In this document: piece after piece, positions 44,301 through 64,000 of the stretch
How positions within the stretch are numbered: position 1 is the first letter of the stretch
How the letters are laid out: each line of letters opens with the position of its first letter
NCBI RefSeq assembly: GCF_002113885.1
Contig: NW_018480056.1
Location: forward strand, 257,369 to 321,368
Origin: Mizuhopecten yessoensis
Lineage: Eukaryota
DNA: 64,000 nucleotides
Direction of reading: 5' to 3'
The notes under the pieces: model-generated
Seen by the model: only the letters and a program-made list of their open reading frames with translations
The model's database searches: none
What the model was told of the DNA's origin: nothing
Program-made: the position numbers and the translations under genes

Positions 44301-47300
44301 CCTCCTCTCAGACTGCCTTTATCGGAAATAATCGTGACATCAGCCAGTGTGGTAGGTATTCATACTACAGATTAATGTGATGTCAGGATTGCATCCTATC
44401 ATAATTTAATTTTAATGGATGCATTTGATCTGATCAAAAAGTCCTATCAAATATATGTTTTTTGTCAATTATCTCAAATGACCCTATTTTCATGTGTAAC
44501 ATATAATTTCTACAAAATGTCTGTCTGTCTGTCATGTAGTGAGATTAACTGATTATCTTCAATACCACTGATAGTTTACATACCGGGGTAACACATGCAT
44601 TGTCTCCCTAAACACTATATTACTCTACATGGACAGTGTAGTATGTCACTTAAGAAACTGTTTTAATTTGTAAATGGTCTATTTTCATTGAGGTTCTTAA
44701 ATGTATAAATTATCTTCCTTTACGGTCCCTTACTTGCTAAAAGCGTGAATGGTGTAATACATGGAGGTTCTTAATCACTTAAATGATCTCCCTTTACAGT
44801 CCCATATGTCACTTAAGGACTTGTTAAAATGTGTGAACAGTCTCTTTTCATTGAGGTTCCTAAATGTATAAATTATCTCCCTTTACAGTTACCAGTATTC
44901 ACAAACAAATTATGTTGTTAAACAATGTCAAAATGTACAAATTATCTCCCTGTACAGTTACCAGTATTCACAAAGAAATTATGTTGTTAAACAATGTCAA
45001 AATGTACAAATTATCTCCCTTTACAGTTACCAGTATTCACAAACAAATAATGTTGTTAAAATGTCAAAATGTATAAATTATCTCCCTTTACAGTTACCAG
45101 TATTCACAAACAAATTGTGTTTTTAAACAATGTCAAAATGTTTTAATGATCCGTTTTACAGAGATTGAGGGTCATGTATGTGACCCGGAATGTTCGATAG
45201 ACGGCTGCTGGGGCATGGGTCCCAATAAGTGTCTATCCTGTAGACATATGAAGGTGAACGACAGCTCCAACCTGTGTCTTAAAACCTGTGATGCCAGCCC
45301 TCTACTGTACCAGGATACTCCTAGCGGGTGTAAACCCTGCCACAAAGAATGTGCCAACAACTGTACTGGTCCTGTAAGTTTGTATTCAGCTCTACCTCGT
45401 TACTCATGGCACTACATACAAAAATGACTGCAGGGACATTAAAGGACATGTCCACACGTCCTGTAATTTTATTTAATCACAAAGGATTGTATAGTCTTCA
45501 AAAATGAAAAAAAAACACGTCATATTTTAGAAATATGGGAACTTTCAATGCTAATAAAGGAAAAACGTACCATGAAGTTAAAAGTGTCATTGCAATTTTA
45601 AAAATTTTGTTGGAGAAATTTTCGACAGAAATATTTCATACTGTATAAGTCATCTTGCCTTTTACAAAATTATTGTTGTTTGCAATTTGAATATTAAAAG
45701 AAAAACCCAGGGGAACTGCTTATATATATATACTTAGCTAATGTTACTTTGACAAGAAACTTAACCTGAAGCCAAAAATACTTTCTTTTATCATTACCCC
45801 GTTTTCTATATAGGGGGAAGGATGCTCATCATAACCCCGTCTTCTATATAGGTGGAAGGATGCTCATCATAACCCCGTCTTCTATATAGGTGGAAGGATG
45901 CTCATCATAACCCCGTCTTCTATATAGGTGGAAGGATGCTCATCATTACCCCGCCTTCTATATAGGGGGAAGGATGCTCATCATAACCCTGCCTTCTATA
46001 TAGGTGGAAGGAGGCTCATCATAACCCTGCCTTCTATATAGGTGGAAGGATGCTCATCATAACCCCGTCTTCTATATAGGTGGAAGGATGCTCATCATAA
46101 CCCTGTCTTCTATATAGGGGGAAGGATGCTCATCATAACACCGTCTTCTATATAGGGGGAAGGATGCTCATCATACCCCCGTCTTCTATATAGGGGGAAG
46201 GATGCTCATCATAACACCGTCTTCTATATAGGGGGAAGGATGCTCATCATTACCCTGTCTTCTATATAGGGGGAAGGATGCTCATCATAACCCTGCCTTC
46301 TATATAGGTGGAATGATGCTCATCATAACCCTGCCTTCTATATAGGTGGAAGGATGCTCATCATAACCCCGTCTTCTATATGGGTGGAAGGATGCTCATC
46401 ATTACCCCGTCTTCTATATAGGTGGAAGGATGCTCATCATTACCCCGTCTTCTATATAGGTGGAGGGATTCTTCAAGCTGTGAAAGCAGCAGAAATTGAT
46501 GTTTGATGATGCAGTACTTTTATTAATTAGTGATGTTTTCAAAATAATTAAAGGCTGGTTGAGTTTCCACCACTATAAGAATAATAATACTATAATCACA
46601 TATAATTGTCTGGAGCTGATCTGACAATAAGCCCATGCCTGGTAATAAGCCCACCCATAGCTACTGCAGTTCAGTAAAAATATGAACAGATGCTATATTA
46701 TTGTCCTGTAATAAGCTTACCTGCCTACTTCGAGTCAGAGATCATGGTCCTGATCCTCTTGTTGTTTATTTTTTGTAGAAAGCCAGTCAATGTGATTCCT
46801 GTAAACACATCATCGTCGTTGACAGCAACAATAGTATGCAGGTTTGTCACGAGACATGCCCAAAGAAATTCTACGCTGACGAGGACAAGATCTGTCGACC
46901 ATGCTACGAACACTGCAGCAACGGGTAAGTCAGCTTAAATTATTCATGTTTCTTATAACACAAACTTATATACCAGTAAATATTACTACAGTAATTTAAA
47001 TTGTTGTACACCATTATTTTTAAGAAGGGTTCTTAAATAAAACAAAAAAATCAAATTAAAAATAATATAAATGCAAAGTTTGTTTCGAACACAAACTGGA
47101 ATTGAAAATATTTTTTGTGAACTTTCAGAAACGTCGTGTAGATTACTCTTTGCTTGACAAAGAGACAGACATTTTCGAAAGCTTGCAAAAGAAGTTAATA
47201 ATTCCTGTTTGTGTTCAAAAGAAACTTGGCATTTATTATGTATAAACCAAACTTATGAATCTTATTCCAAATAAAAATAATTCCACCATAAGCACATGTA

Positions 47301-50300
47301 TATCATTACTATTTCATATTTAGTAATATTATTGTACAGATGTACTGGACCCTCGAGTGAGCTGAAGATCGGAGGTTGCAAGTCGTGTAACATTGCAGAA
47401 GAAATACGAGACGGTGGAGGGGAGATACGCCTCTTCTGTATAGCAGATGACGGATCAGATTGTCGTAAGGATTTCTACAAAACCACGGTAACGGCAAAGG
47501 ACCCTGGCCCTATGGCAGGCGGACAGGTAAAATTAACAGATTAATTATAATGCTCTATCAAATGAACTTTTTGATTAATCTCACTCCTTTTTACATAATT
47601 ACCATTTTCTTGTTAAGCTGCACATCATTGAGTAATAATTTAGGAACGTTCAATTGTCCCAGCTCTTTTCTGATTTGATCATTTTTCTGTTAAATTTGCC
47701 ACATTACTCTTTCTTATCATGCAAAGACAATTTTAGGTTGCTGGACTTTTAAGGAAGTTAATTTAATCATGTTGAAATTATCCCCATTAGTCTGTGGACA
47801 TGTCAACATAACAAACATCTTGGGTGTGACACTCTGACTTAACCCTTTCACCACTGTGTACCATAATGGACTCGTCCAGATCAATGAATGGTAGAGTTGA
47901 CTAAAGTTACATAGGGGTGAATGGGTTAAGTATGTCATTTGGGTCACATCATTTTTATTTAAGAATTTATGCATGTACATCAAATAAAATATTCTTGGAT
48001 AAATGATATAAGTTCATCAAATCTCTGATAGATGGTCATCTGTTTTCAGTTGTGTAAGCCCTGTCATCCCTTATGTGACGGATGTGTCGGTCATGGACCC
48101 GCCCAATGTAAGAGCTGTCTCCACTATAAAGAGGATGACTATTGCGTGGCGTCCTGTCACAGCTTCAACTACGGCAACAAATTGACGAAGCGATGTGAAC
48201 CATGCCATGCAGAATGTCAGAAAGGTTGTTCTGATCCCACAGCTTCTGACTGCTTCTCGTGCAAAACCTACAAAATCTACACCGACGAGGCCAATAGCAT
48301 GAGAGTGAGTCCTGATTCCATTTAATGATCCAAGTTTTTAGCGTTTTTAGCATATGTTTCATACTCAATAGCAAAACTTATTTCCAGTCAGAAAAAAAAT
48401 CATGTACAAGATTGTTGTTTTTTAACTTTTTTCTAACTTATTAAATTAGCAAAGTTTGTTTTCAATCTGAAAATTTTATGTACAATGTTTGTTTTGAAAC
48501 ATTTTGTATGGCCTAGCCATAAAATGGAGGGTATATAATGCTGCCCAAGTTTGTCTCATCCCCTCACCTCGTTATACAATGTAAATTAACGCTCTAGCAA
48601 ATTCATTCTGTGACGGATTTTCCTCAAACTATAAACAAATGTCAAAAGTTTGCAAACACATCAGATGACTTAGTGTTTTAAGATTCCAAGGTCTAGATCA
48701 AGGTCAAGGTAGTGGTATGGTAAAACACTAACCTTGGGTTTATTTCACTGCCTTTATTATATCAGGGGGGGGGGGGGGGGGGGNNNNNNNNNNNNNNNNN
48801 NNNNNNNNNNNNNNNNNNNNNNNNNNNNNNNNNNNNNNNNNNNNNNNNNNNNNNNNNNNNNNNNNNNNNNNNNNNNNNNNNNNNNNNNNNNNNNNNNNNN
48901 NNNNNNNNNNNNNNNNNNNNNNNNNNNNNNNNNNNNNNNNNNNNNNNNNNNNNNNNNNNNNNNNNNNNNNNNNNNNNNNNNNNNNNNNNNNNNNNNNNNN
49001 NNNNNNNNNNNNNNNNNNNNNNNNNNNNNNNNNNNNNNNNNNNNNNNNNNNNNNNNNNNNNNNNNNNNNNNNNNNNNNNNNNNNNNNNNNNNNNNNNNNN
49101 NNNNNNNNNNNNNNNNNNNNNNNNNNNNNNNNNNNNNNNNNNNNNNNNNNNNNNNNNNNNNNNNNNNNNNNNNNNNNNNNNNNNNNNNNNNNNNNNNNNN
49201 NNNNNNNNNNNNNNNNNNNNNNNNNNNNNNNNNNNNNNNNNNNNNNNNNNNNNNNNNNNNNNNNNNNNNNNNNNNNNNNNNNNNNNNNNNNNNNNNNNNN
49301 NNNNNNNNNNNNNNNNNNNNNNNNNNNNNNNNNNNNNNNNNNNNNNNNNNNNNNNNNNNNNNNNNNNNNNNNNNNNNNNNNNNNNNNNNNNNNNNNNNNN
49401 NNNNNNNNNNNNNNNNNNNNNNNNNNNNNNNNNNNNNNNNNNNNNNNNNNNNNNNNNNNNNNNNNNNNNNNNNNNNNNNNNNNNNNNNNNNNNNNNNNNN
49501 NNNNNNNNNNNNNNNNNNNNNNNNNNNNNNNNNNNNNNNNNNNNNNNNNNNNNNNNNNNNNNNNNNNNNNNNNNNNNNNNNNNNNNNNNNNNNNNNNNNN
49601 NNNNNNNNNNNNNNNNNNNNNNNNNNNNNNNNNNNNNNNNNNNNNNNNNNNNNNNNNNNNNNNNNNNNNNNNNNNNNNNNNNNNNNNNNNNNNNNNNNNN
49701 NNNNNNNNNNNNNNNNNNNNNNNNACTGGTTTATTTCACTGCCTTTATTATATCATGGGGTAATTTACACCTGATTTATTTCACTGCCTTTATTATATCA
49801 GGGGGTAATTTACACTGGTTTATTTCACTGCCTTTATTATATCATGGGGTAATTTACACCTGATTTATTTCACTGCCTTTATTATATCATGGGGTAATTT
49901 ACACTGGTTTATTTCACTGCCTTTATTATATCAGGGGGCAATTTACACCTGGCTTATTTCACTGCCTTTATTATATCAGGGGGTATTTACACCTGGTTTA
50001 TTTCACTGCCTTTATTATATCAGGGGGGTAATTTATGCGTGGTTTATTTCACTGACCTTGTAATGACCTTTTGTGCTTCAGTTTAACTGTACATCTGAGT
50101 GTCCAACTGACATGCCCCATCTGGTCAAGGACGAACATGACACGAAGAACGGGATGACTGTTTGTGCACGAGATGACCACCCTATGGTTATGGCTAGAAT
50201 GGCCGCAGATGCCGAGTAAGTAACCAATCTTTGTTAAACTAACTTATGGGTATTTTTTTTAACTTATATTATAAAATACAGCAGCAGCTACATGACGGTT

Positions 50301-53300
50301 GCTGTAATCATGTGATAGTTCTAATTATATAATAGTTGTCTTATTAGATGACTGATGTTTTAATTACATGATAATGTTGTAATTGCATGATAGTTGTGGT
50401 AATTACATGATAGTCGTTGTAATGCCATGATAGTTGTTGTAATTACATGATAGTTGTTTTAATTACATGATAGTTGTTGTAATGACATGATAGTTGTTGT
50501 AATGACAGGATAGTTGTTGTTATAATTACAAGATAGTTGTTGTAATGACATGATAGTTGTTGTAATGCCATGATAGTTGTTGTAATGACATGATAGTTGT
50601 TGTTGTAATGACATGATAGTTGTTGTTGTAATGACATGATAGTTGTTTTGTAATGACATGATAGTTGTAGTAATGACATGATAGTTATTGTTGTAATGAC
50701 ATGATAGTTGTTTTGTAATGACATGCTAGTTGTAGTAATGACATGATAGTTGTCGTAATGACATGATAGTTGTTGTTTTAATGACATGATAGTTGTTGTT
50801 TTAATGACATGATAGTTGTTGTTTTAATGACATGATAGTTGTTTTAATGACATAATAGTTGTTGTTGTAATGACATTATAGTTGTTGTTGTAATTACAAG
50901 ATATTGTTGTAATGACATGATAGTGGTTGTTGTAATTACAAGATATAGTTGTAATGACATGCTAGTTGTTGTAATGCCATGATAGTTGTTGTAATGACAT
51001 GATTGTTGTTGTAATGACATAACAGTTTTTGTTTTAATTAGATGATAGTTGTTGTAGTGACATGATATTTGTTGTTTTAATTACATGATAGTTTTTGTTG
51101 TTACATGATAATTGTTTTAATTACATGATAGTTGTTGTAATGACATGATAGTTGTTGTAACTGACATGATAGTTGTTGTAACTGACATGTTGGTTGTATC
51201 AAGGTGATAGTTGTTTAAATACATGACAGTTCTAATTATATGATTGTGTAAATGACAGGGAAGAAAAGAAGAAGATAGCCGTGATTGCAGGACCAGTAAT
51301 TGGAGGAATCATCCTTGTGGCTATTCTCCTTGCCCTGTTTGGTTACTATTGGCGACAGCAAGCACGCTCAAAGGAGAAAACAGCTATGCTGACTGCCAAG
51401 ATGACTGGCTATGATGATGAGGTAACATAGATGAATATTTGTGAAGCTGCTAAATGATTTCTAATGTGTAAAATAAACAAGTCATAAAAGTAATTGATAT
51501 AATATGATAATGGTATTATTGATGACTGCAGAAGACTGTGATCAAAGCTGAGAATATTTTTTTTGTTTCCGTAGCAACCTGTGACACCAACCAGTGCGAA
51601 ACCTGACATGTCTCATCTACGCCTTATTAAAGAATCAGACATGCGTAAGGGAGGGATCATTGGCTCTGGAGCATTTGGAACAGTGTACAAGGTATGTAAA
51701 ATGGCTTCTCCCTATCTCAAAAATATGAAAAGATGCCTGTCTTTCTGTTAAATTTCTTCTATATTAACAAGGTAAATGTTTAGTTAACCGAAAATGAATT
51801 TCTTTTGTAAAGTTTCTATAAGTTTACATCTTTGGACCATAATTATACGCTGATAAAAATGTTATGTTTTTTTGTTTTTGTATCTCAATATTCATGTAAA
51901 AAGACAAAATGCAGAATGAAAAATAAAGGAAATTGTTGCATTGTACCTGTCTTTCTTAGGGATTCTGGATCCCGGCCAAGGACAACGTTAAGATCCCAGT
52001 GGCCATCAAGGTCCTCCAGGAGGGAACATCGGCCAATCAGAACCAGGAACTCCTCGACGAGGCTCGTGTGATGGCCTCTGTTGACCATCCCTGCTGTATC
52101 CGGATCCTCGCTGCCTGTATGACAGCTCAGATGATGCTGATCACCCAGCTCATGCCTCTCGGTTGTTTACTTGACTACGTCCGCAAACACAAGGAAAACA
52201 TAGGCTCAAAGGTCCTTCTCAATTGGTGTACACAGATTGCAAAGGTACATAAATGTTTGAGTTGTCTCACTTTGTATATATTGTCAGTGTTCTACAAGAG
52301 TTATGCCCCTTGCTAAGAACTTTTTTCCTTTTAGCAGAATTGAGTCGAACAAATAGCAAAAGTAATTTCAGGGAGTTTAAATTGTACTTAGCACAAACTT
52401 TTGCTTTCATCCTGTAATGATATGTTTGTTTTGTCTAATTTATTAATGAAACCTGTTAACTAACAATATTGTCCCTGGCAAGAGATTGTCTGGCTGGCCA
52501 CAGTCAGGTGTGAGGCCTACAGCATTGCACAGCATTTGAATACCAGTGAACTGTTAGGTGTAGGTTCAACTCTCGGAGGGAGGGCCTCTTTTGTCAGACC
52601 ACAGAACTCCAGGGTCCACAAATAGTTGTATGTAGATGATGTTTAACTTGCAGCAACCCTTGATGTAAATACTTATGTTCGTGTTATAGATGTTTTACTT
52701 TATTTTTGTATCACATACAGCTTGTTCTTTAAAAATAAAGTATGGTCCCAACAACTTCAATATCGTCTTATTTGACGGTTTTGTTTGACTATCTACAATA
52801 TTGTGTTTCCCCTTCCAGGGAATGGCCTACTTGGAGGAGAGAGATGTAGTTCACAGGGACTTGGCCGCCAGAAATGTATTAGGTCAGTTTTCTTCTTATA
52901 CATAGAATCTTCCATGAGTTTCCATTTCATATGAGATTTATGAAACGAGTCTAAGAAATTTTCAATTTAGCTAGCCTCTGGCGAGCTAAAATGAAAAATT
53001 CTTGACGAGTTTCATAAATTTCATATGAAATGGAAACGAGTGTAAGATCCATTATATCACATAATCAAGATTTGTGGCATTTATTCAAGTAAATCAACAA
53101 TTTTCATGCAACCTTGAAATGTAAAAAGCCACCATTTTGACTCCAGTGCATAAGTCTGTGATGTCATGTACTTGTCCTAGGCTTGACGTCACAATTGAAA
53201 CTTTCAACCAATCACAGGGCTGACAGCTATAGGTCATATTACATGGATTAATACGCAAAAAGATATGACATGGGTATATTCACAGTACATTATGTGATAA

Positions 53301-56300
53301 ACAGTTATTAACAAATGATCAGGTTTATCAGGGACATAAAAAATCAAATTAACTGAACATTTTTAATTGCTGTAATTTTCATAATGGTGCAGTTCAATTT
53401 AAAACCATGATTGTGTTATGATTGATTTTAGTACAAAGTCCTGGCCAGGTTAAGATAACAGATTTTGGTTTGGCCAAACTCCTGGATTATAACGAGGACG
53501 AGTACCACGCAGCAGGAGGAAAGGTAGACAACTCTTACTTGTATAACATTTATTTTTATTGTGAGTGACAACTTAATATTTTCTGTATTTGACCAATAAC
53601 AGACTGGTTCATTTGTGTTTTTTCAGTAACAATTTTGTGAGAGTAATATAATGGTGTTCTGAAATCTGTTGAATATACATTAAATACTTTTCAAAAAGCA
53701 AGTCAATGAGACAGTGGAATTAGTTTCTATTTCCAATAAATCTTTAAAATACACCAATTTGTATAACTGTAAATATTAAATCTGCTGGATGTAAGGTGTA
53801 TTTACAAATATAGGATAATACTTAATTGTATTTCATTTGATTAAATCAAAACAATGGTATATTTGATTATTATCAAATGCATACTTTAAGTTTGAATTTA
53901 TATACTAAATTCTGTATTGCCTTCTGCTGTAGATGCCCATCAAATGGCTGGCTCTTGAGTGCATCCAGCATAGAATATTTACTCACAAGAGTGACGTCTG
54001 GAGCTACGGTAATGATGCTGATATGGATATCTTTTTACATAATTTGATGAAAATTATCTTTTAACTTTTAATTAATAAAAGGAGAAACATTTCAAATATA
54101 GGGCAGAGATACTAGTTTTCCTTTACTTTATAAAGGACAATATACTCCATTGTTCTTATTTGTTAATAATGTTACTTAGTTTATTAGGGATTGGAGAATT
54201 TCCAAAGAAAAAAACATTATCGCAACATTTAAAAAAATGAGATTAATAAAAAGTACAGTTTGGCTTTCGAAGAATTAGTTAATTTTGTTTTCTTTGAAAA
54301 TGGACCAAAAATGCTAAAATGTGTTGTCGGGTCCTGAAAAGTATTAGCAAAGTTTACTCTTTTTAATATGGTTCCTAAAGTTTTACCTCCGATGTTGTTT
54401 ATCTCACATTGAGTAACCTTGACTTGTAGGTGTTACGGTGTGGGAACTATTTACATACGGACAGCGACCGTATGAGAATGTCCGTGCACGTGATGTACCG
54501 GATCTGCTAGAGAAGGGGGAACGACTCCCACAGCCACATATCTGTACCATTGACGTCTACATGATCATGATCAAATGTAAGCTTGTTTGTCCCTTTCTGG
54601 CTTTATTGACGTATACATGAGCATGATCAAATGTAATCTTGTTTGTCCCTTTCTGGCTTGATTGACGTCTACATGAGCATGATCAAATGTAATCTTGTTT
54701 GTCCCTTTCTGGCTTTGTTGATGTCTACATGAGCATGATCAAATGTAAGCTTGTTTGTCCCTTTCTGGCTTTATTGATGTCTACATGATCATGATCAAAT
54801 GTAAGCTTGTTGGCCCTTTCTGGCTTTATTGACGTCTACATGAGCATGATCAAATGTAAGCTTGTTTGTCCCTTTCTGGCTTTATTGACGTCTACATGAT
54901 CATGATCAAATGTAAGCTTGTTGGTCCCTTTCTGGCTTTAGTAATGTCAGGAAGAAAATGTTTGTATAGCCTTGGCAGATGTTCATGTCTGAATTCTATG
55001 TACATGTGATTGAGTCATCCAAATTAGTTGTTTTCAATTCGGAGACACACAAAAGTCGTGCTTGAGTATAAGAATAGTTTCATGCAGTCACAGGCCCTAC
55101 TATTGTGGATTATACAAATTAGATTATTTTGTAATTGGTTTTAGACTTTTCATAATAAGATGCCTTCTCTTCCTACCATATAATTTGCTTGCAATATTTT
55201 ATATCTTGTAAAATTACATATTTGGAACATGATTAAAAAAAATAACTGGACGAATAATGAGTATATGAAACTTGTCCATCTTGTCTTAATACTGAAAGTT
55301 AAAGAGAAATTTACTTACATTTTTCTTTTAATATTTATTCCAATATTTGTTCTGTTTTAAGGTTGGATGTTAGATGCAGATAGTCGTCCTTCATTTATAG
55401 AGCTGGCAGAAGAGTTCGCAAAGATGGCGCGTGACCCAGGAAGATATCTTGTTATTGTTGTAAGTGTCCTTAACAGATTTTCATTCATCTGGGGTAATTA
55501 TCGAACTGATAAATATTGGGAATTATTCAGTAAAAATTGTATTTTTGTTGAAAACGCTCTGTAAAATTCATATTAGCAATGAAATATTTGTTGATAGAAT
55601 TCTCAAAAGGTTTCTGTATTTTGATTATCAACATTTCAGCTTAATTTTTGTGTTTCCATTCCTTCCGTAAATGCTGAATAATTGTGCGAAAGAATATTTT
55701 TTGGTTGTGGTAAAGTACTAAAGCAGAAATAGAAAACTTTAAATGTCAGTAAATTATAAATATTGTTATTTCGAATTATTCCCAATATCTCAGAAAATCA
55801 TTATCAGCAACAATCATCTGCTTTTAAGAACCTTTTCTTCATTATTTGGTTGATGGATTTTTCACTTGTTTTTTTTTCCATAATAACTGCTTTTATGTTT
55901 GCTTTTAAAACTTTAATTATGCTGTGCTTTTCAAAATATAATTTCCTTTTTTTTTTTTTTTTTAATTTTGACTTTAATTTTTGCTGTCTATAGAACGTGG
56001 GGCCAGACTTTGGAGCTCATGCCTAGGCAAAACTTTCCGACACTGTAGTACAACCTTGTATATTGTATACTGTAATGTAGATAGAAAAACTGCTATGCAC
56101 CTGCCAGATTTCATACCGGATTAGTTAGCAGACACGAAATGGTTTTTGAATATCTTTATTACTGAAAAATATGATGATCATTTTTGATTTATTTTTTACT
56201 AAACTGTTTTTAATTTTAAAGTTGTAATGGGAAGTTTTTTCAAAGGTTTTGTGTAGATATCAAATTTATTATGAAATATAATCAAAGACTTTATTAATTA

Positions 56301-59300
56301 AGCAAACGAAAACTATTAATTATATATTGATATTGCTAAATATAATAGATGTTGAAAACTAAGAATGATCTGAAATGATCAGAAATTGATTTTGTTTCAT
56401 CCAGCTAGACATAATAAGTTGCATTGAATTAAAAAAAAAATGAATTCAATTTTTTTTTCTGAAAAGATTTAAGGAGAAATGGAAAAGGTGACTTTCAAAT
56501 GTAAACATCGTTTCAAATTATTCTTTTGATAGGAAGTATATTAAACATTTAACAAGTTGAAAGGTACTGAATTGATTTGCTCTACTGTAAGAATTGTTCG
56601 AGTGGTTATCAAAGGAAAGATAACTCTGGCTTGGATTTCATTCCTGTGATATGATCCATGATAGGGTGACGTATTGAAGAAAATCCCTGAAGAAACTCCC
56701 TCACCCGTCACAGACCTAGCCGAATATTTTCCCGACGGTACCCAAAATGACCCTGAGACTCAGGCAGAGGTACAAGCCCGCCACCAGGGGGCGCATGTCA
56801 TGCATGACTCCGTCTCTAGTTTGAATGTATCAGTGTTTTTATATTTATCTCCCTTTATTCACCAGTTTCAGACACACACATGGTGCTCCTTGTTTGATTG
56901 GCTCATTGTAAGGTTTGGATATGTAGCTAACTCAAAGGTTGATAAGTTTGGATATGAACCTCGTATACCGTCAAGATCAGTTTCGTGTTACTATCACTAC
57001 TGCATATGATGTTACAATCCAATCAGATTCGCATGCTTCTGTGTCATGTTTCTCAAAATCAAAAAATCAATTACGCTTGCTTGTTATTATGATAAAATAT
57101 TTGGACAAAAACCTCTTATGATGCTTTCGAAATTTAATCTATATTATAAAGATTATATGCCATAATGTAATAGAAGCGTCATAATGATTTTATGGTTCAA
57201 ATTTTTGTTACTGACTTTCTATATCCTCGTTTCAAAATAAAAGTTTCAGAAAACTCAGGTTATAATGTCATATGAAAATTTGAGAATGAAGGCCAGCCAA
57301 GAAAATCTAGGATGGAAAGAATCCCTCAAGTTAAGGTTTCAAACCTGATTATGTGTCATGCTCTGTTTAGAAGTGAATTAAGTTACAAAGCCAATCAGAC
57401 TGGGGAATGAACTACATTCCTTGCATGAAATTTGTACATACTTGTATCCATAGCAACCTCCCATATATACTATTTTTATCATTTACATTAATATCTTTTA
57501 CAATATGATTTATTCATTTCTTGCGGGAACAATTTCCATATTGTCACCATAGTAACAATAAATTGTGTTGTAGACGGCAAAATGTGATGATGTCATCAGC
57601 TTTTGTGGTTGATATGTCATCAGTTTGTGTGCATCAGTTTTTTTTGCAGCTTCATTCCTCCATATTGAATGCAGATAGTGCCTGGAAAATATTGTGTCCA
57701 GTATTTTATCTGTTATCATGATAATACCACTCCTAACCTGCCTCAAATATAGAATAACAATTGTCTTGGCAATACACTTATAAGATGTGTTTACAATGTT
57801 CTTTAATTCTGTAAGTTTTAAGTAGTGTATCGATAATGAATATAGATTTTATGACTCGCACATTTTGTAATAGATATATATACATTCTAGTTGAAGTAGC
57901 TAGCTAACACATTTTGTGCATGTTTTTTAATTGAATAATTAATACTTTAAAACACAGGTAGATTTTTTTTCTTAATTAAACTTTCTTCCCAATTTTCTTT
58001 AAATTTATCAAAAAAAAAGAAGACATGAAATTTGTAGATTTTTGAGAATATTGCATGAAGTACCAAAAAATGTATATTTTTATAAAACCCTTTCAGCTAA
58101 ATAAAGTGCATGCCTTGGTAAAATTAATTGTATTTAAAGCGTTTTCGAAGATAAATGTTAGGACATGTGGCTTTATTAAATTGCTGTTTATTAAAAAATG
58201 TTCAGTGCTTTATATACAAATTTGCATGGTTTTTATCTTTAATGTACAAAAAGGGAATGAAACTTAGGAAGCAATAACAAAATAACAGGGGATCGGGATT
58301 AAAGAATTGTGAACTGTTTGTTCTTTTAAACAAATGATTCATGATTTCAGAAGAATGTTTTTTTAGTGATTCAATTGTTTTGAAATTATCCCATTTTTAG
58401 AGATTACACATTTTTATTATGAAGCTAAGGATTTTTAACATATGAACTGCATTGTGAAATCTGACAATACTGCATCTATAACACTGAATGTACCTGTAAC
58501 ATGCAGATGACTGTTCAAATGGTAGAATGTCAGGTCTCTCTGCCATGTTCTCTACTCCAACTCCTACTTCCCATATAGACACCAATGATTATGCACCTTC
58601 TACAATGATAAGACCTAACTTCCCTGGAGAACCAGTTATTTTATTTATGAGGATATCACACATATATAAATTTGTGCACACTTGTTGGGTTAGATATATT
58701 TGGTATCTCCCTCATTAATGGTCAGTACCTGTATTTTTAGGTCACCTGAGACAAAGTCTCAAGTGACCTATTGCGATCGCCTTTTGTCCGTCGTCGTCCG
58801 TCGTCCGTCGTCCGTCCGTAAACAATTTACATTTTCGACTTCTTCTCCGAAACCCCTGAACCAATTTCAATGAAATTTTGCAGGGACCTTCCATGGACAA
58901 AGGTCAACAAAAATAGTTGCCGGTTTAGTCCTAAGCCCCCAGGGGCCTGAGGGGCGGGGCCAAAAAGGGTCAAATTGACTAAAATTTCAAAAATCTTCTN
59001 NNNNNNNNNNNNNNNNNNNNNNNNNNNNNNNNNNNNNNNNNNNNNNNNNNNNNNNNNNNNNNNNNNNNNNNNNNNNNNNNNNNNNNNNNNNNNNNNNNNN
59101 NNNNNNNNNNNNNNNNNNNNNNNNNNNNNNNNNNNNNNNNNNNNNNNNNNNNNNNNNNNNNNNNNNNNNNNNNNNNNNNNNNNNNNNNNNNNNNNNNNNN
59201 NNNNNNNNNNNNNNNNNNNNNNNNNNNNNNNNNNNNNNNNNNNNNNNNNNNNNNNNNNNNNNNNNNNNNNNNNNNNNNNNNNNNNNNNNNNNNNNNNNNN

Positions 59301-62300
59301 NNNNNNNNNNNNNNNNNNNNNNNNNNNNNNNNNNNNNNNNNNNNNNNNNNNNNNNNNNNNNNNNNNNNNNNNNNNNNNNNNNNNNNNNNNNNNNNNNNNN
59401 NNNNNNNNNNNNNNNNNNNNNNNNNNNNNNNNNNNNNNNNNNNNNNNNNNNNNNNNNNNNNNNNNNNNNNNNNNNNNNNNNNNNNNNNNNNNNNNNNNNN
59501 NNNNNNNNNNNNNNNNNNNNNNNNNNNNNNNNNNNNNNNNNNNNNNNNNNNNNNNNNNNNNNNNNNNNNNNNNNNNNNNNNNNNNNNNNNNNNNNNNNNN
59601 NNNNNNNNNNNNNNNNNNNNNNNNNNNNNNNNNNNNNNNNNNNNNNNNNNNNNNNNNNNNNNNNNNNNNNNNNNNNNNNNNNNNNNNNNNNNNNNNNNNN
59701 NNNNNNNNNNNNNNNNNNNNNNNNNNNNNNNNNNNNNNNNNNNNNNNNNNNNNNNNNNNNNNNNNNNNNNNNNNNNNNNNNNNNNNNNNNNNNNNNNNNN
59801 NNNNNNNNNNNNNNNNNNNNNNNNNNNNNNNNNNNNNNNNNNNNTTTGAAAATTTTGAGCCAGCCCTACCCCCAAGGGCTGGAGGTGCTAGTTTCAAATC
59901 CTTTTTAGTCTGAAATCTGTATGCTAGATATTGAGTAAGGTGGTTTTATTGTTTTTTGTCACTTTGAATAATATTTCTGTTCATGTTAAAAACAAAATCA
60001 ACTCTCTGTATAAATATATCAGGTGACCGTTAAGGCCCATGGGCCTCTTGTTGGTATAGTAGTATCCCTTTAATGTGTGGTAAGCTGATTGATTGATTTG
60101 GAATGCATACATTATATTTGTTAACAAAATCCCTACCTTTAACTTCTCCAATAATTTGCCTAACATTCAAGGGGGAAAAAACATCTAAACAACAGCTTAT
60201 ATCTTTTCTGAACTTTTCAAATGGGTTTTCCTAAGAAACATGTCAAATTCAGTAAGTTCTATAATTGTTAAGATGATTTGGGACTTCTAGGCAGGTTACA
60301 TAGTTATGTTATTATGACTACTTTTTGTTAAAAAAAAAAGATTTTCTTTTGAATTCATGATGTCATATTTCAAAAAAAAAAGGTTCTTTGTTTAAATGGG
60401 TTTATAAGAGATATCATACTTCGTAAATATTTTATTCTTTTCACAGTAAAGAGATTTGTTATACATATCTTGTGTTACAATTAAGCTAATAATGTTTCTC
60501 TTTTTGTTTGTTTCTACTTTAAAAACTAAATACTAGTATCATGTGTACCTCCATTGATATGTATACATATTATACTGACATTCTGTCAATATTATCTCAG
60601 GGTTCACAATAAGCTAACAGGATTCTAAGATGCACTATCAAACATCTTGATATGGAATGTAACGAGCGTCAGTTAAATTGTAAAAAGTATATCTATGAAA
60701 GTTACACCTGTACCGTATTTGCCGTAATGACTATCCTCCTCCAGCAATAGGAACTATTTCATCAGGATTGTTTCTACTTCCTGTATTGACTGTACCTGTA
60801 GGTCATTCCTCTTCAATTGAGTATAGGCACCTTAATTTAATATTACCACCAGTAATATAGGCACCTTAATTTGATATTACCCCCAGTAATATCTTCTAAG
60901 GACAAAAGATATTCTATGAATTGAAATTATGCATCAGGTGCCAAGAATGAGTTACAGTAGAATAAAAAAATTCAGAACTCATAGAAATTCTTGATTCTGT
61001 AAAGGTCTATATTAAGTGCCTGTCAGACTGTCAGTTTTATAAAGGGGGATATCTACATGTATGTACGGCAAATACGGTACCTGAAACTACAGAGCTGACA
61101 CAAGTTATATTGTACATTGTAATAATATGGTCTTACATGAAGTTAATGGTTTTCCCTTTTTTATTACATTTTAGCATGACAAATTGATGCGATTGCCAAG
61201 CCACTCTTACGACAAAAACGATCTTGCTCGTAGCCTCAGTGTGGCAGGAGATTGCCCAGAAGAAGTTGTGGAAGCAGATGACTATTTACAGCCGCAGTCT
61301 CGTAATTCAGTGCCTCCGACAACACCACTCACATCAAAGGTAAGTTTGTGGTGTTAATTTCTTTGATTTACATGATCCTTGATTGCAGAAACAAATCGGG
61401 GGGTATCATTCCTCCTTAACGATTTGATTAGAAAACACACTAAAATAGGTAATCATTTTCAGAAGAGATGTCTAGGGCAAGAACACTATTATCTTTGGGC
61501 TTAGTGACCTCTACCTTATCTAACAGTTTCTATTGGTGGAAATCATGGAATAAATTGCACTCTGTCCAAGAGACTAAATGCTAAATGTTCAGCAATTTTA
61601 GGGTTAGTGCAATGACTAATTGACCCGTTGTCAGTTTCTGTGACCAGAAATAGTACTGTTTGGGACGCTTTCATCCTAACATTTCAGTGAGTCAGCATCA
61701 GATCTGCGCTATTGTTTGGATGCAAATACAGTAACATACCCCTTCAAGCACATAAACATGCATTACACACATGAAGCAATGTCCTTAAATGACCTTAGCC
61801 GTTAACATGAAACCATCTTACACATTTATATATTTTATTGCCAAGCCGGAGTTATTTTATTGCTTTTGAAACAGGAAAACAGTCCTTCTTTGTCCCTTGT
61901 TATGAACGTTATATGTAAACACTCTATGATTGACTGTTGCGATTTTTAACAACATCGAGTGCAGTGTTATCAAGCTTGTAACAGAGACTGGCTTGTTTGC
62001 TAAATTGGATGTCACTACCATTTTGAACAAGAACCTAATTACGGTGAGGCAAATATTATTAATTTATACGTTAGATTCTATTAACTGATCAGTCTTTTAC
62101 AGTATGTATCTTCTATTTCAGACACCATTACTGCACCCTCAGGATGCTGCCACAAATTTTGATACCAAGGATCGAGACCCTCACCAGCAGCCGCGACGAG
62201 AGAAAAGATACGGACATCTCGAGTCCGCAGCTGCTGCTCGTAAAAAGCGAGAGTTATCCCCAACTAGAGGAAGGGGCAATAGCATTAATTCTCGCTACAG

Positions 62301-64000
62301 TTCAGATCCCGTCCAGTTTTTAAGAGGAGGAGGTAGGACTTTAACTTTATTAAAAGATTGAATTATTTTTCTGCACACACCTTTTTGGAGATAAGGAAGT
62401 TGTCCTTTTTTAAAGACTCAACTGTAAAAGATATCATTATATTTAAATTGAGATCTGCTGATAATTATCAAATTTTGATAGATTAATAAAAAGTAAACAT
62501 CTGTTAAATTTGTAGAAGAGACAGATGCTGTGATTTTGTCTCCGAGTCGGAAAAGTCCCGTCAGGAACGGCTCCATGGGTTACCCAGACCCGACCCAACT
62601 AATAGAGTCCGGTAAAATCCAGCTCCCAGTGGACGAGGACGACTACTTACAACCAAAGTCATCAAAACCCAGAGTGTACACTGATCTGATAGAGAACCCT
62701 GGTAAATATACATCCTATATACCTGTACCGTATTCAGGTAAATAAGATCCCCATCCCTTTTAGAAACCCATAATTTTTTTATCTATTCTGTGATTCTCAT
62801 CTTTTCACCATAATTTTATTTAAGTGACTTTAATATATTTGTATTACTTCTTTTTTTTTGAGAAATGAAAAAAGTTCTACAATCTTTCTAGCTTTTCCAA
62901 TTTGCTAACCTGTCAGGGTGCATATTACTTAAAAAACCAGATATTTAACGCCAAACCAGATATTTAATGTCAAACTTAACACTCACCAAAACTCAGGAAG
63001 CATTAGCTGTTAAAATATGTTTTTAAAATTGCAATTAACTCATCCCCCCTGATAACACATGTGTACTCTTCCAATTCAATGGTTGGAATAGTTCATTATG
63101 CAATTTCATGGGTGAATGAGTTAAACACATTTGTGTAAACTCCCTTTTACATACAGTTTGTCTAAGCTGAAGCTCAAGGGGGCTGGTACAGACCAATGAT
63201 TGAAGAGCAGTGTATTAATCAAAGCTGCATTTACCTAAGTTTGCAATAAATTGATGACTTTTTAAAACTCCTAAAACCATGATCCTTTGGAATTTAAACT
63301 TTTTGATTCATATTTGTTTCTGTCAAAGTCACCCCTGTTGATATACTCCCAGGCCATCTATCAAACAGCAAAGGTGTTGGCTAATCATTCAATGCCTTCA
63401 GTGGGTAGTTGGGTGGCACACTTGCCTTTCACCAAGGCGTCCAGGGTTCGATTCCCCGATCAGACGTGATAAGGTATGGGGTCACCTGCCCGACCACGTA
63501 GGTTTTCTCCTGGTACTCCAGTTTGCTCCCACATAAAGACCCCTGCCCACTAACATCCGGGCCAACAAAAGTGATTAGTATAAGTTGAAATATGACTTGT
63601 TTCATAATTCAAATTGTCAAAAAGAAAAAGATTTTTTTTTCAATGCCTTCCCTAACTGTGATTGAATACCTTAAGTGAGGCTTAAATTGAAGTTTTAGTT
63701 AGCTTAGCGAATATTCAGAATGATTCAAATGGTATCAACATACTTTGAAGTATCCTTAAACATAATTCAAGTTTTGAATTACATGAATTATTTGATAAAT
63801 AATAGGAATTACTTCTAAAATGATTTATGTGTTGGGGCTTAGTTATTAGATAGAATTTGTCATAAAACTAATGTTTATTATGGACTGTTTTTCAGATTAC
63901 ATGAATGACAACAGTGTTTTTGAGAACGATCCACCTTCAGAACCGGAACCCGTCCTCAATTTTGAGAATCCAGAATATTTTGAAGATATCAATAGTCCAA
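31957..64000 (+). CDS. EGFR: Epidermal growth factor receptor (EGFR/ErbB family RTK), multi-exon, 5' and 3' partial (26 coding exons in window)
   Basis: Spliced exons join in frame with GT-AG ends and give L1/CR1/L2/CR2 ectodomain, TM helix, kinase motifs [36 protein letters not shown], and EGFR-type tail motifs RYSSDP and NPEY. Confidence 0.97.
32974..33108 (+). CDS. EGFR: EGFR exon B (end of L1: [26 protein letters not shown])
   Basis: cag acceptor, gtaagt donor, 135 nt, phase 1/1. Confidence 0.95.
33350..33507. mobile_element. MITE with CAGTGGCAGATC TIRs (hAT-like termini)
   Basis: cagtggcagatctag / ctggatctgccactg; no clear TSD. Confidence 0.7.
34010..34440 (+). mobile_element. Decayed HINE-like element with aaggtcaaggtca core (related pieces at ~37740-37990 minus and ~48505-48715)
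   Basis: Repeated aaaggtcaaggtcatt and tagcaaattcattct motif shared with 48595. Confidence 0.45.
34770..34854 (-). mobile_element. TTAA MITE family A
   Basis: Reverse copy with both TIRs. Confidence 0.8.
35847..36015. mobile_element. Diverged MITE with imperfect ~30 bp TIRs
   Basis: acccagtttcactaagattccttaactta vs ttagtttagggaacattcacgaaattagggt. Confidence 0.4.
36824..37475. repeat. 26 bp minisatellite x~25
   Basis: tgattctttatttgatgtctgtgagt, nearly invariant. Confidence 0.97.
38002..38085 (+). CDS. EGFR: EGFR exon C (CR1 start: [28 protein letters not shown])
   Basis: tttcag acceptor, gtaagt donor, 84 nt; furin-like Cys pattern; not in ORF track. Confidence 0.93.
38240..38872. mobile_element. 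Tc1/mariner/pogo-like non-autonomous element with subterminal 18-bp repeats
   Basis: TIR ttattgattctaataat / attattagaaccaataaggta; attattagaacaca repeats at 38280 and 38797-38861. Confidence 0.6.
39248..39369 (+). CDS. EGFR: EGFR exon D (CR1: [11 protein letters not shown]...[19 protein letters not shown])
   Basis: ccag acceptor, gtaaag donor, 122 nt, phase 1/0. Confidence 0.95.
39464..39554 (+). mobile_element. TTAA MITE family B
   Basis: TTAA-CCCATTAACCCCT...GGGTGAATGAA-TTAA; internal aaagactgggcaagtccagtttaa. Confidence 0.75.
40303..40444 (+). CDS. EGFR: EGFR exon E (CR1 dimerization arm: [47 protein letters not shown])
   Basis: taag acceptor, gtaact donor, 142 nt, phase 0/1. Confidence 0.93.
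40710..40817 (+). CDS. EGFR: EGFR exon F (end of CR1: [16 protein letters not shown]...[10 protein letters not shown])
   Basis: gcag acceptor, gtaagg donor, 108 nt, phase 1/1. Confidence 0.93.
41383..41494 (+). CDS. EGFR: EGFR exon G (L2 start: [15 protein letters not shown]...[11 protein letters not shown])
   Basis: long polypyrimidine tract plus tag, gtatgt donor, 112 nt, phase 1/2. Confidence 0.95.
42138..42302 (+). CDS. EGFR: EGFR exon H (L2: ...[14 protein letters not shown]...[13 protein letters not shown])
   Basis: acag acceptor, gtacgt donor, 165 nt, phase 2/2. Confidence 0.95.
42395..43617 (+). mobile_element. TTAA MITE family A split by a ~1.15 kb hairpin-ended insertion (~42445-43590)
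   Basis: Left MITE half 42395-42444, right half 43591-43617; insert has a perfect 24-bp inverted repeat 43482-43505 / 43567-43590. Confidence 0.75.
44152..44351 (+). CDS. EGFR: EGFR exon I (L2 end: [17 protein letters not shown]...LCYANTVNF)
   Basis: gcag acceptor, gtaggt donor, 200 nt, phase 2/1. Confidence 0.95.
44862..45140. repeat. 69 bp tandem repeat x4 abutting the exon J acceptor
   Basis: aaatgtataaattatctccctttacagttaccagtattcacaaacaaattatgttgttaaacaatgtca. Confidence 0.92.
45162..45373 (+). CDS. EGFR: EGFR exon J (CR2: [22 protein letters not shown]...CKPCHKEC)
   Basis: acag acceptor, gtaagt donor, 212 nt, phase 1/0. Confidence 0.95.
45790..46465. repeat. 38 bp minisatellite x~18
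   Basis: catcataaccccgtcttctatataggtggaaggatgct. Confidence 0.95.
46779..46924 (+). CDS. EGFR: EGFR exon K (CR2: [10 protein letters not shown]...[27 protein letters not shown])
   Basis: gtag acceptor, gtaagt donor, 146 nt, phase 0/2; true frame differs from ORF-track frame. Confidence 0.93.
47340..47526 (+). CDS. EGFR: EGFR exon L (extended Cys-rich region: [16 protein letters not shown]...)
   Basis: acag acceptor, gtaaaa donor, 187 nt, phase 2/0. Confidence 0.92.
47839..47929. mobile_element. TTAA MITE, related family C
   Basis: TTAA-CCCTTTCACCACT...AGGGGTGAATGGG-TTAA with a different interior. Confidence 0.75.
48050..48304 (+). CDS. EGFR: EGFR exon M (extra furin-like repeats: [12 protein letters not shown]...[12 protein letters not shown]...CKTYKIY)
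   Basis: ttcag acceptor, gtgagt donor, 255 nt, phase 0/0. Confidence 0.94.
48735..50055. repeat. ~45 bp minisatellite spanning the 48784-49724 gap
   Basis: ggtttatttcactgcctttattatatca(t/g)ggggtaatttacac on both sides of the gap. Confidence 0.85.
48784..49724. other. Assembly gap
   Basis: N run. Confidence 1.
50082..50215 (+). CDS. EGFR: EGFR exon N (membrane-proximal: [16 protein letters not shown]...VCARDD)
   Basis: ttcag acceptor, gtaagt donor, 134 nt, phase 0/2; not in ORF track. Confidence 0.92.
50360..51240. repeat. ~20-23 bp degenerate minisatellite filling the intron before the TM exon
   Basis: gtaatgacatgatagttgtt variants. Confidence 0.93.
51259..51421 (+). CDS. EGFR: EGFR exon O (transmembrane helix [26 protein letters not shown] plus juxtamembrane)
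   Basis: acag acceptor, gtaaca donor, 163 nt, phase 2/0; ~24 hydrophobic residues with GxxxG. Confidence 0.93.
51575..51691 (+). CDS. EGFR: EGFR exon P (JM and kinase P-loop: [11 protein letters not shown]...[11 protein letters not shown])
   Basis: gtag acceptor, gtatgt donor, 117 nt, phase 0/0. Confidence 0.96.
51960..52244 (+). CDS. EGFR: EGFR exon Q (kinase N-lobe and hinge: [29 protein letters not shown])
   Basis: ttag acceptor, gtacat donor, 285 nt, phase 0/0. Confidence 0.97.
52819..52882 (+). CDS. EGFR: EGFR exon R (catalytic loop: [21 protein letters not shown])
   Basis: ccag acceptor, gtcagt donor, 64 nt, phase 0/1. Confidence 0.96.
52902..53300. mobile_element. Hairpin-ended non-autonomous DNA element (Crypton-like architecture)
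   Basis: ~150 bp near-perfect palindrome 52902-53052, then IR tatcacataat / attatgtgata. Confidence 0.65.
53432..53523 (+). CDS. EGFR: EGFR exon S (DFG and activation loop: [25 protein letters not shown])
   Basis: ttag acceptor, gtagac donor, 92 nt, phase 1/0. Confidence 0.96.
53933..54008 (+). CDS. EGFR: EGFR exon T ([25 protein letters not shown])
   Basis: gtag acceptor, gtaatg donor, 76 nt, phase 0/1. Confidence 0.96.
54430..54576 (+). CDS. EGFR: EGFR exon U ([11 protein letters not shown]...[23 protein letters not shown])
   Basis: gtag acceptor, gtaagc donor, 147 nt, phase 1/1. Confidence 0.96.
54549..54939 (+). repeat. 56 bp tandem repeat x7 made of the exon U 3' end plus its splice donor
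   Basis: attgacgtctacatgatcatgatcaaat|gtaagcttgtttgtccctttctggcttt. Confidence 0.95.
55362..55459 (+). CDS. EGFR: EGFR exon V (kinase end: [12 protein letters not shown]...[12 protein letters not shown])
   Basis: taag acceptor, gtaagt donor, 98 nt, phase 1/0. Confidence 0.96.
55994..56026 (+). CDS. Candidate alternative terminal exon ([10 protein letters not shown]-stop) giving a tail-less EGFR
   Basis: Long T-rich tract ending ctatag at 55993, then a short GC-richer phase-0 frame ending TAG; no transcript evidence available. Confidence 0.35.
   Translation, partial: NVGPDFGAHA
56665..56826 (+). CDS. Candidate alternative first C-tail exon ([54 protein letters not shown]), paralogous to exon W
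   Basis: atag acceptor in phase 0, GC-rich coding-like island, aligns by eye to exon W; possible donors after 56769 (gtacaa) or 56826 (gtatca), or read-through to stop at 57009. Confidence 0.6.
58737..60052 (+). mobile_element. HINE/Helentron-type non-autonomous element spanning an assembly gap
   Basis: 5' aggtcacctgag...ctcaagtgacct IR, (cgtc)n microsatellite, satellite-like core, 3' caggtgacc sub-TIR plus aggcccatgggcct hairpin, T-rich flanks. Confidence 0.85.
59000..59844. other. Assembly gap
   Basis: N run. Confidence 1.
60711..61079. mobile_element. TA-flanked MITE (pogo/Tc1-like)
   Basis: Perfect 16-bp TIR taccgtatttgccgta / tacggcaaatacggta. Confidence 0.8.
61175..61339 (+). CDS. 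EGFR: EGFR exon W (C-tail start: [21 protein letters not shown]...[10 protein letters not shown])
   Basis: ttag acceptor, gtaagt donor, 165 nt, phase 0/0; EGFR-like xDxLMRLPS and ADDYLQP. Confidence 0.93.
61620..61812 (+). mobile_element. Decayed SINE fragment sharing its 3' tail with the 9541 SINE
   Basis: tccttaaatgaccttagccgttaa matches tccttaaatgaccatagctgttaa at ~9700. Confidence 0.45.
62122..62332 (+). CDS. EGFR: EGFR exon X (C-tail with RYSSDP)
   Basis: ttcag acceptor, gtagga donor, 211 nt, phase 0/1. Confidence 0.92.
62516..62701 (+). CDS. EGFR: EGFR exon Y (C-tail: [11 protein letters not shown])
   Basis: gtag acceptor, gtaaat donor, 186 nt, phase 1/1. Confidence 0.9.
63035..63124 (+). 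mobile_element. TTAA MITE family A
   Basis: Both TIRs and family interior. Confidence 0.8.
63393..63610 (+). mobile_element. tRNA-derived SINE with V-domain-like core
   Basis: B box GGTTCGATTCC, core GGTTTTCTCCTGGTACTCCAGTTTGCTCCCAC. Confidence 0.75.
63896..64000 (+). CDS. EGFR: EGFR exon Z, runs off window (DYMNDNS...FENPEYFED)
   Basis: ttcag acceptor in phase 1; NPEY and YMN motifs. Confidence 0.9.

What the first reader, a model, noticed from the sequence alone, without database searches (positions are those of the whole stretch)
56665..56826. Apparent duplicated first C-tail exon: candidate mutually exclusive splicing switch of the EGFR signalling tail
Seen: in the intron after the last kinase exon (ends phase 0, ...RYLVIV) a GC-rich island follows an AG and reads [35 protein letters not shown]. 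It aligns by eye to exon [34 protein letters not shown] (xDxLxxxP, DLA, PE). With the donor after 56826 it is 162 nt phase 0/0, against 165 nt phase 0/0 for exon W, so the two are interchangeable. Known: EGFRs continue RYLVI with GD, which this copy retains while exon W has HD; this segment carries the first tail phosphotyrosine (human Y992-type ADEYL). Inference: tandem exon duplication gave an alternative tail lacking ADDYLQP and carrying AEYFP instead, which would rewire docking or autoinhibition. Read-through to the stop at 57009, with AATAAA at 57236, would instead give a short-tail isoform.
Basis: partly seen in the sequence, partly recalled or inferred. Interest (0 to 1): 0.8.

Follow-up and report, generated by a model that had tools for sequence, protein, structure and literature searches.

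The report
Optional 35-residue exon in scallop EGFR
The suspected extra exon in this scallop's EGF-receptor gene is real, but it is an optional 35-amino-acid insert placed in front of the normal first tail exon rather than a swap-in replacement for it, which makes it an ordinary kind of alternative splicing at an interesting spot.

Summary
The GC-rich open stretch is really there, and RNA data show it is a real exon. Its boundaries are 56665-56769 (105 nt, 35 codons, phase 0/0), not the 162-nt version. One RNA run holds both joints, 55459>56665 and 56769>61175, beside the skipping joint 55459>61175, giving roughly 30% inclusion. The donor joint 56769>61175 appears in four runs from four studies.

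The exon is therefore spliced in front of exon W (61175-61339), not instead of it. It is a cassette exon, not a mutually exclusive pair. No 56826 donor was seen. Read-through toward the stop at 57007-57009 stays at intron background.

Homology to exon W is at best marginal. Unanchored shuffles give p about 0.4, N-anchored shuffles give 0.015-0.057, and there is no DNA similarity. Exon W matches the human EGFR proximal tail; the cassette matches nothing.

A second divergent genomic copy has lost the acceptor and the first 11 codons. That fits a young, dispensable exon.

Inferred effect: a spacer with an EYF tyrosine and TP/SP sites sits between the kinase core and the autoinhibitory tail module. 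The closest analogue is ERBB4 CYT-1/CYT-2.

Conservation in other molluscs and public isoform models could not be checked. The scan holds no earlier finding on this exon.

The parts
55362..55459 (+). Last kinase-domain exon of the EGFR-type gene, ending ...RYLVIV in phase 0. Its donor GTAAGT is at 55460.
   Evidence: Sequence and translation. It is the source of both joints, 55459>56665 and 55459>61175.
56663..56664 (+). Acceptor AG of the cassette exon. The pyrimidine tract is weak: 50% pyrimidines at -20..-3, against 83% for exon W.
   Evidence: The joint 55459>56665 is GT..AG.
56665..56769 (+). Alternatively included cassette exon: 105 nt, 35 codons, phase 0/0. It starts GDVLKKIP and holds TPSP and AEYFP motifs.
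   Evidence: Run X5 has a 135-nt unitig covering exactly 56665-56769 plus 30 nt of the upstream exon, at depth 168. The joint 56769>61175 is seen in X5 (122), X7 (6.9), X9 (2.9) and X20 (1 raw read with a 74-nt anchor).
56770..56775 (+). Donor GTACAA of the cassette exon, weak against the GTAAGT of the neighbouring exons.
56770..57009 (+). Continuation of the open frame past the donor to the stop at 57007-57009. This is intron, not exon, in the RNA seen.
   Evidence: Translation. Depth here is 9 or less in X5 and 1.5-5 in X7 and X9, like the other intron bins. No joint from 56826 was listed.
61175..61339 (+). Constitutive first tail exon (exon W), collinear with the human EGFR proximal tail (AP-2 helix, acidic hook, Y992-type site).
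   Evidence: The only PDB match is human EGFR, covering DERMHLPSP...DEYLIPQ, at E 0.045. The joint 55459>61175 has depth 313 in X5 and 2 raw reads in X20.

Best explanation
window:56665-56769 is a genuine, frame-preserving cassette exon of an EGFR/ErbB-type receptor gene, apparently that of the Yesso scallop. Most mRNAs join the last kinase exon (end 55459) directly to exon W (61175). A minority, about 10-35% in the runs seen, first splice into the weak acceptor at 56665 and leave through the weak donor after 56769 into exon W. The resulting isoform carries 35 extra residues exactly between the end of the kinase core (RYLVIV) and the proximal tail module that exon W encodes. In human EGFR that module is the AP-2 helix, the acidic 'electrostatic hook' and the first EYL phosphosite. 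Shown: the exon, both of its joints, the skipping joint and the preserved frame. Inferred: the insert is an acidic, proline-rich and probably disordered spacer. It would move the autoinhibitory module 35 residues away from the kinase core. It puts a look-alike start (GD.L...P) in the first positions. It adds a tyrosine with the EGFR-family signature of -1 acidic and +1 large hydrophobic (AEYF), plus proline-directed TP/SP sites. Together these could tune autoinhibition or add a docking site. The exon looks young or lineage-specific and may be dispensable.
For: The gene is of EGFR type. A kinase exon matches human EGFR at E 1e-37, and exon W aligns collinearly with the human EGFR tail. The joints are 55459>56665 (GT..AG, X5 depth 168), 56769>61175 (GT..AG; X5 122, X7 6.9, X9 2.9, X20 1 read with a 74-nt anchor) and 55459>61175 (X5 313, X20 2 reads). 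An X5 unitig covers exactly 56665-56769. X20 read orientation fits + strand RNA. The exon is 105 nt with no stop, phase 0/0. Its splice sites are weak, as is typical of alternative exons. The sequence is single-copy apart from one divergent second copy, so it is not a transposon. The -1 acidic/+1 hydrophobic motif is the EGFR-family tail phosphosite signature (PMC6077704). The start of the tail is autoinhibitory and co-evolved with the kinase, and deleting it activates EGFR (PMC8615588).
Against: Both joints of the exon are seen together in only one run (X5). In X7 and X9 the donor joint sits on contigs that run unspliced through the acceptor (56500-56767 and 56574-56769), so these may be splicing intermediates. 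No homologue of the peptide was found anywhere. The second genomic copy lacks the acceptor and 11 codons and has no in-frame AG. The shared part differs by 2 synonymous and 3 non-synonymous changes, which shows no constraint. An [DE]Y[LFIMV] motif arises in 4.6% of shuffles of the peptide. No protein-level or functional data exist.
Confidence: 0.6

Rival explanations
1. Real splicing but no function. A young, neutrally exonized piece of intron is included at low to moderate level as tolerated splicing noise, and the 35-residue insert has no selected role.
For: Acceptor and donor are weak. No homologue was found among 1.84 billion representatives or in the PDB. The second copy of the locus keeps constitutive exons under constraint (24 synonymous: 14 non-synonymous changes in 200 codons). 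It has deleted the cassette's acceptor and first 11 codons, and shows 2 synonymous: 3 non-synonymous changes in the remainder.
Against: Inclusion of about 30% in X5 is high for noise. The exon is in frame without stops, coding-like in GC, and begins with the GD.L...P pattern expected right after RYLVI in EGFRs. It also carries an EYF motif. Whether the second copy is an allele, a paralogue or a decaying copy is unknown.
Confidence: 0.3
2. The exon and exon W are tandem duplicates used in a mutually exclusive way, giving two alternative first tail segments.
For: Both exons are phase 0/0, and both are joined directly to 55459. Start-anchored collinear alignment is marginally better than shuffles (p 0.015-0.057; p 0.0005-0.002 with a cut chosen after the fact).
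Against: The donor after 56769 joins 61175 (exon W) in all four runs, so the two exons coexist in one mRNA. The lengths differ (105 against 165 nt). Unanchored alignment gives p about 0.4 and the DNA test gives p 0.73. The PDB search links only exon W to EGFR tails.
Confidence: 0.04
3. An alternative last exon. Transcripts read through the donor to the stop at 57007-57009 and end at an intronic poly(A) site, giving a short-tail receptor.
For: The frame stays open to 57006 and an AATAAA lies at 57236. Low-depth contigs cover 56740-57742 in three runs and stop near 57742-57771.
Against: Depth there (X5 9-13; X7 and X9 1.5-5) equals that of other intron bins, against 122-168 for the spliced exon. 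No pile-up of molecule ends was reported (table 6). Contigs cannot show RNA ends.
Confidence: 0.03
4. An intron-borne transcript. A separate RNA starts inside the intron near 56450-56500 and uses the 56769 donor to reach exon W, so the exon would be non-coding in those RNAs.
For: In X7 and X9, coverage begins around 56345-56574 with none in 55545-56344. The contigs holding the 56769>61175 joint run unspliced through the acceptor.
Against: X5 shows the exon cleanly spliced to 55459 at depth 168. The uncovered stretch upstream is very AT-rich (GC 0.18-0.27), where low-depth contigs tend to drop out. The tool warns that holes prove nothing.
Confidence: 0.03

Closest known systems
ERBB4 CYT-1 / CYT-2 isoforms (inclusion or skipping of exon 26, 16 residues, in the cytoplasmic tail; PMC2944867)
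   Same: An ErbB-family receptor with a short frame-preserving cassette exon in the cytoplasmic tail. It is included in only part of the mRNAs, and in ERBB4 it adds a docking motif (the PI3K-linked isoform).
   Different: Here the exon is 35 residues and sits at the very start of the tail, directly after the kinase core, not further down. There is no sequence relationship, no known binding partner, and no evidence of conservation beyond this genome.
ERBB4 JM-a / JM-b (alternative use of exons 15 and 16; PMC2944867)
   Different: JM exons are extracellular juxtamembrane and are used one or the other. Here the two exons are joined to each other in the same mRNA.
Human EGFR proximal tail module (AP-2 helix, electrostatic hook, Y992 EYL site) and the activating vIVa/vIVb tail deletions (PMC8615588, PMC6077704)
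   Same: Exon W is the collinear counterpart of this module. The cassette alters the same kinase-to-tail junction whose integrity controls autoinhibition in human EGFR, and it carries an E-Y-hydrophobic site like EGFR tail phosphosites.
   Different: The scallop variant is a natural insertion made by splicing, not a deletion. Its effect on activity is untested.

Membership tests
EGFR/ErbB receptor tyrosine kinase gene | Kinase domain closest to EGFR-family kinases | tested here: met
   The exon 51960-52250 matches human EGFR chains at E 1e-37, and all top PDB matches are EGFR.
EGFR/ErbB receptor tyrosine kinase gene | Proximal C-tail collinear with the ErbB tail start (D.RM.LPS ... acidic run ... 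D/E-Y-L-x-P) | tested here: met
   Exon W aligns with human EGFR DERMHLPSP...DADEYLIPQ. This is the only PDB match, at E 0.045.
EGFR/ErbB receptor tyrosine kinase gene | Cysteine-rich furin-like extracellular domains and a single transmembrane segment upstream | not tested
   Cysteine-rich open frames at 45077-48322 and a hydrophobic stretch at 51236-51427 were seen by eye. No family scan was run on them.
Cassette (skipped/included) exon | Spliced joints on both sides of the exon to the flanking exons | tested here: met
   55459>56665 (X5) and 56769>61175 (X5, X7, X9, X20), both GT..AG.
Cassette (skipped/included) exon | A skipping joint between the same flanking exons | tested here: met
   55459>61175, with X5 depth 313 and 2 raw reads in X20.
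Cassette (skipped/included) exon | Length a multiple of three, without a stop, so both forms are coding | tested here: met
   105 nt and 35 sense codons, and both flanking exons meet it in phase 0.
Mutually exclusive tandem-duplicated exons | The two exons are never joined to each other | tested here: not met
   The joint 56769>61175 is present in four runs of four studies.
Mutually exclusive tandem-duplicated exons | Demonstrable homology and near-equal length of the two exons | tested here: inconclusive
   Lengths are 105 against 165 nt. Shuffle tests give p 0.40-0.46 unanchored, 0.015-0.057 N-anchored, and 0.0005-0.002 with an end point chosen after the fact. The DNA test gives p 0.73.
Mutually exclusive tandem-duplicated exons | Each exon joined to the common downstream exon (56769>62122) | not testable with these tools
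   62122 lay outside the 6000 bases allowed in the single read-laying run.
Alternative 3' terminal exon / intronic polyadenylation isoform | Read-through coverage above intron background, ending at a defined 3' end | tested here: not met
   Depth at 56945-57744 equals that of other intron bins, and no pile-up of molecule ends was reported. Contigs cannot show ends, so this is a weak test.

The most novel reading that the evidence does not exclude
The cassette is an ancient, degenerate tandem copy of the first 33 residues of the autoinhibitory proximal-tail module. Scallops would regulate its inclusion to produce an EGFR whose kinase core is followed by a decoy module carrying its own EYF phosphosite. 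That would be a natural splice-controlled dial on ErbB autoinhibition, at the same junction where glioblastoma deletions activate human EGFR.
Probability: 0.12. Interest if true: 0.6.

Novelty: new member of a known kind. Interest (0 to 1): 0.3.

Why it matters
In human EGFR, the first 40-50 residues after the kinase core hold the receptor in check (PMC8615588). A natural isoform that inserts 35 residues exactly there, with an extra EGFR-type tyrosine site, would be a simple comparative handle on how tail geometry controls ErbB autoinhibition. It would also be an invertebrate parallel to the ERBB4 CYT isoforms. If the exon turns out to be scallop-specific and neutral, it is just one more example of a young alternative exon, and matters only for correct gene models.

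Tried and rejected
1. The peptide was searched against 1.84 billion protein representatives. There were four hits at 38-40 bits, in HEAT-repeat, insect-allergen and similar repeat proteins. Pairwise comparison gave E 0.08-0.13, so these are chance. A self-level match would score about 69 bits. Isoforms collapse into one representative, so this blank says little about annotated isoforms.

2. A word-index search with the 114-residue open frame found no candidate. Only proteins of 63-200 residues were eligible, so this is uninformative for full-length receptors.

3. A PDB search with the cassette found nothing at E up to 10.

4. An Rfam and tRNA scan of 55300-62500 found nothing, so the GC island is not a known RNA gene.

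5. A transposon origin is rejected. The stretch has only itself and one divergent copy in the genome.

6. The 162-nt exon with a donor after 56826 had no joint listed.

7. Literature searches for scallop or bivalve EGFR isoforms found nothing relevant.

For that reason public full-length isoform models could not be looked up.

Full report
**What is in the sequence**

The + strand of the window carries an EGFR/ErbB-type receptor gene. A kinase exon (51960-52250) matches human EGFR at E 1e-37, and every top PDB match is EGFR. The last kinase exon ends ...RYLVIV at 55459 in phase 0, followed by GTAAGT.

Exon W is 61175-61339, 165 nt, phase 0/0. Its only PDB match is the human EGFR proximal tail. 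The two align collinearly over DERMHLPSP through the acidic run to DADEYLIPQ (E 0.045). So exon W is the canonical first tail exon. It encodes the counterpart of the AP-2 helix, the electrostatic hook and the Y992-type site.

In the intron between them, an AG at 56663-64 is followed by an open frame from 56665. It begins GDVLKKIP and stays open to the stop at 57007-57009. It lies in a GC island: 0.53 at 56675-56824 against 0.18-0.30 around it.

**Is it an exon?**

Yes. I laid three runs kept as contigs and one kept as raw reads, from four studies, on window:55345-61344.

- Run X5 is an RNA library in which the canonical joint 55459>61175 has depth 313.
- X5 also holds the joint 55459>56665 (GT..AG, depth 168).
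- X5 has a 135-nt unitig covering exactly 56665-56769 plus 30 nt of the upstream exon.
- X5 holds the joint 56769>61175, listed as 56767>61173 with the cut two places to the right (GT..AG, depth 122).

The joint 56769>61175 also appears in X7 (6.9), in X9 (2.9), and in one raw read of X20 with a 74-nt anchor. X20 has two reads for the canonical joint. The orientation of the X20 read pairs fits RNA of the + strand.

The exon is therefore 56665-56769: 105 nt, 35 codons, phase 0/0. The 162-nt version with a donor after 56826 has no joint.

Rough inclusion estimates:

| Run | Inclusion | Basis |
|---|---|---|
| X5 | 28-35% | 122 or 168 against 313 |
| X7 | about 15% | 6.9 against exon W depth 47 |
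| X9 | about 11% | 2.9 against 27 |

One caveat applies. In X7 and X9 the contigs with the donor joint run unspliced through the acceptor (56500-56767 and 56574-56769). The fully spliced exon is therefore documented in one run only.

**How it is used**

The donor after 56769 joins exon W, so both exons are in the same mRNA. This is a cassette exon, not one of a mutually exclusive pair. The included form reads kinase core, then the 35-residue insert, then the normal tail, all in frame.

The splice sites are weak, as is usual for alternative exons:

| Site | Cassette exon | Neighbouring exons |
|---|---|---|
| Pyrimidines at -20..-3 of the acceptor | 50% | 83% (exon W) |
| Donor | GTACAA | GTAAGT |

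A joint 56769>62122, which would skip W, lay outside the 6000 bases allowed and remains untested.

Read-through past the donor toward the stop has depth 9-13 in X5 and 1.5-5 in X7 and X9. That equals other intron bins, so the short-tail isoform has no support. In all three contig runs the contigs stop near 57742-57771. I could not explain this, and contigs cannot show RNA ends.

**Is it a duplicate of exon W?**

This is not established.

- Local and semi-global alignment of the peptide to exon W is no better than shuffles (z 0.0-0.4, p 0.33-0.46).
- With the two exon starts anchored, as a duplication would predict, and the other end left free, p is 0.015-0.057.
- Forced end-to-end against the first 33 residues of exon W, p is 0.0005-0.002. 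That end point was chosen after seeing the alignment.
- Among the 26 open 35-codon windows that follow an AG in these introns, the cassette scores best (19 against 12 for the next).
- At the DNA level there is nothing (p 0.73).
- The PDB search finds EGFR for exon W and nothing for the cassette.

The shared pattern is essentially .D.L...P at the start, then DLA, then PE. An old partial duplication is possible but not shown.

**Origin and constraint**

The stretch is not a transposon. The genome (987.6 Mb, 82,659 contigs) holds only the stretch itself and one divergent copy, on the 498-base contig C59059.

That contig is one of several tiny contigs: C64874, C26315, C32633, C59059 and C71124. 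Together they tile a second copy of this locus that is about 94-96% identical, running from the kinase exons to the tail exons. It is probably an uncollapsed haplotype, possibly a recent duplicate.

In the second copy, the constitutive exons differ by 24 synonymous and 14 non-synonymous changes over 200 codons, which indicates constraint. The cassette region has a net 40-base deletion that removes the acceptor AG and the first 11 codons. It leaves no in-frame AG, and the remaining 24 codons differ by 2 synonymous and 3 non-synonymous changes. This points to a young or dispensable exon.

No homologue of the peptide was found:

- 1.84 billion representatives gave only chance hits in repeat proteins.
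- The word-index search with the 114-residue frame was blank.

Both blanks are weak evidence. Isoforms collapse into one representative, and the length rule of the word search excludes full-length receptors.

I therefore could not check whether public isoform models already contain the exon.

**Likely mechanism (inference)**

[quoted passage not shown] It has co-evolved with the kinase, and its deletion activates the receptor (PMC8615588).

The cassette inserts 35 acidic, proline-rich residues exactly between the kinase core and that module. It supplies a look-alike GD.L...P start. It adds a tyrosine in an A-E-Y-F-P context, and -1 acidic with +1 large hydrophobic is the signature of EGFR-family tail phosphosites (PMC6077704). 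It also adds TP and SP sites.

The most likely effect is a change in tail geometry, and with it autoinhibition, plus one extra phosphorylation or docking site. The motif evidence is soft: an acidic-Y-hydrophobic triplet arises in 4.6% of shuffles of the peptide.

**Comparison with what is known**

The closest analogue is ERBB4 CYT-1/CYT-2. There a 16-residue tail cassette (exon 26) is included or skipped and changes coupling to PI3K (PMC2944867).

I found no paper on EGFR isoforms in scallops or other bivalves. The scan's own notes hold no earlier finding on this exon. Other agents' notes call this genome the Yesso scallop, which agrees with the assembly size as I recall it. I did not verify the species independently.

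**Verdict**

This is a real, previously unremarked (as far as I could check) alternative cassette exon at an interesting position in an invertebrate EGFR. The mutually exclusive switch is refuted as the main pattern. The duplication is unproven, and function and conservation remain open. It is a new member of a known kind, of modest interest.

Noticed in passing
window 58545-60144 (both sides of the N run 59000-59844): This is a young, high-copy interspersed repeat. There were more than 1,500 first-look candidates in the genome, and the scored copies are 97-98% identical, with an internal tandem unit of about 156-160 bases ('goes back 156' joints). It is covered at enormous depth on both strands in all four RNA runs, up to about 190,000 in X5. 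The assembly gap probably sits inside it.
   Followed up: partly
G000 contigs C64874, C26315, C32633, C59059, C71124 (loci L007, L011, L010, L002, L005): Five contigs of 251-886 bases tile a second copy of this EGFR locus that is about 94-96% identical, from the kinase exons to the tail exons. It has large intron indels and 14 amino-acid differences in 200 constitutive codons. This is either a very divergent uncollapsed haplotype or a recent duplicate.
   Followed up: partly
window 57742-57771: Low-depth contigs of three independent runs all end here, and the next 400 bases have no coverage. The cause is unknown. It could be a polymorphism, an AT-rich dropout or an RNA end.
   Followed up: no
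window 61309: A>G (a synonymous TCA>TCG change in exon W) is carried by all covering contigs or reads in X5, X9 and X20 but not in X7. The same G is in the second copy, C71124. It is a common polymorphism, and the reference carries the rarer letter.
   Followed up: no
window 56444 and 60032: A 'joint' with 40 foreign letters between 21-base sides recurs in all four runs. It looks like an unrelated repeat-borne contig matching two low-complexity spots, not splicing.
   Followed up: no
I avoided it in the read searches and did not examine it.
   Followed up: no
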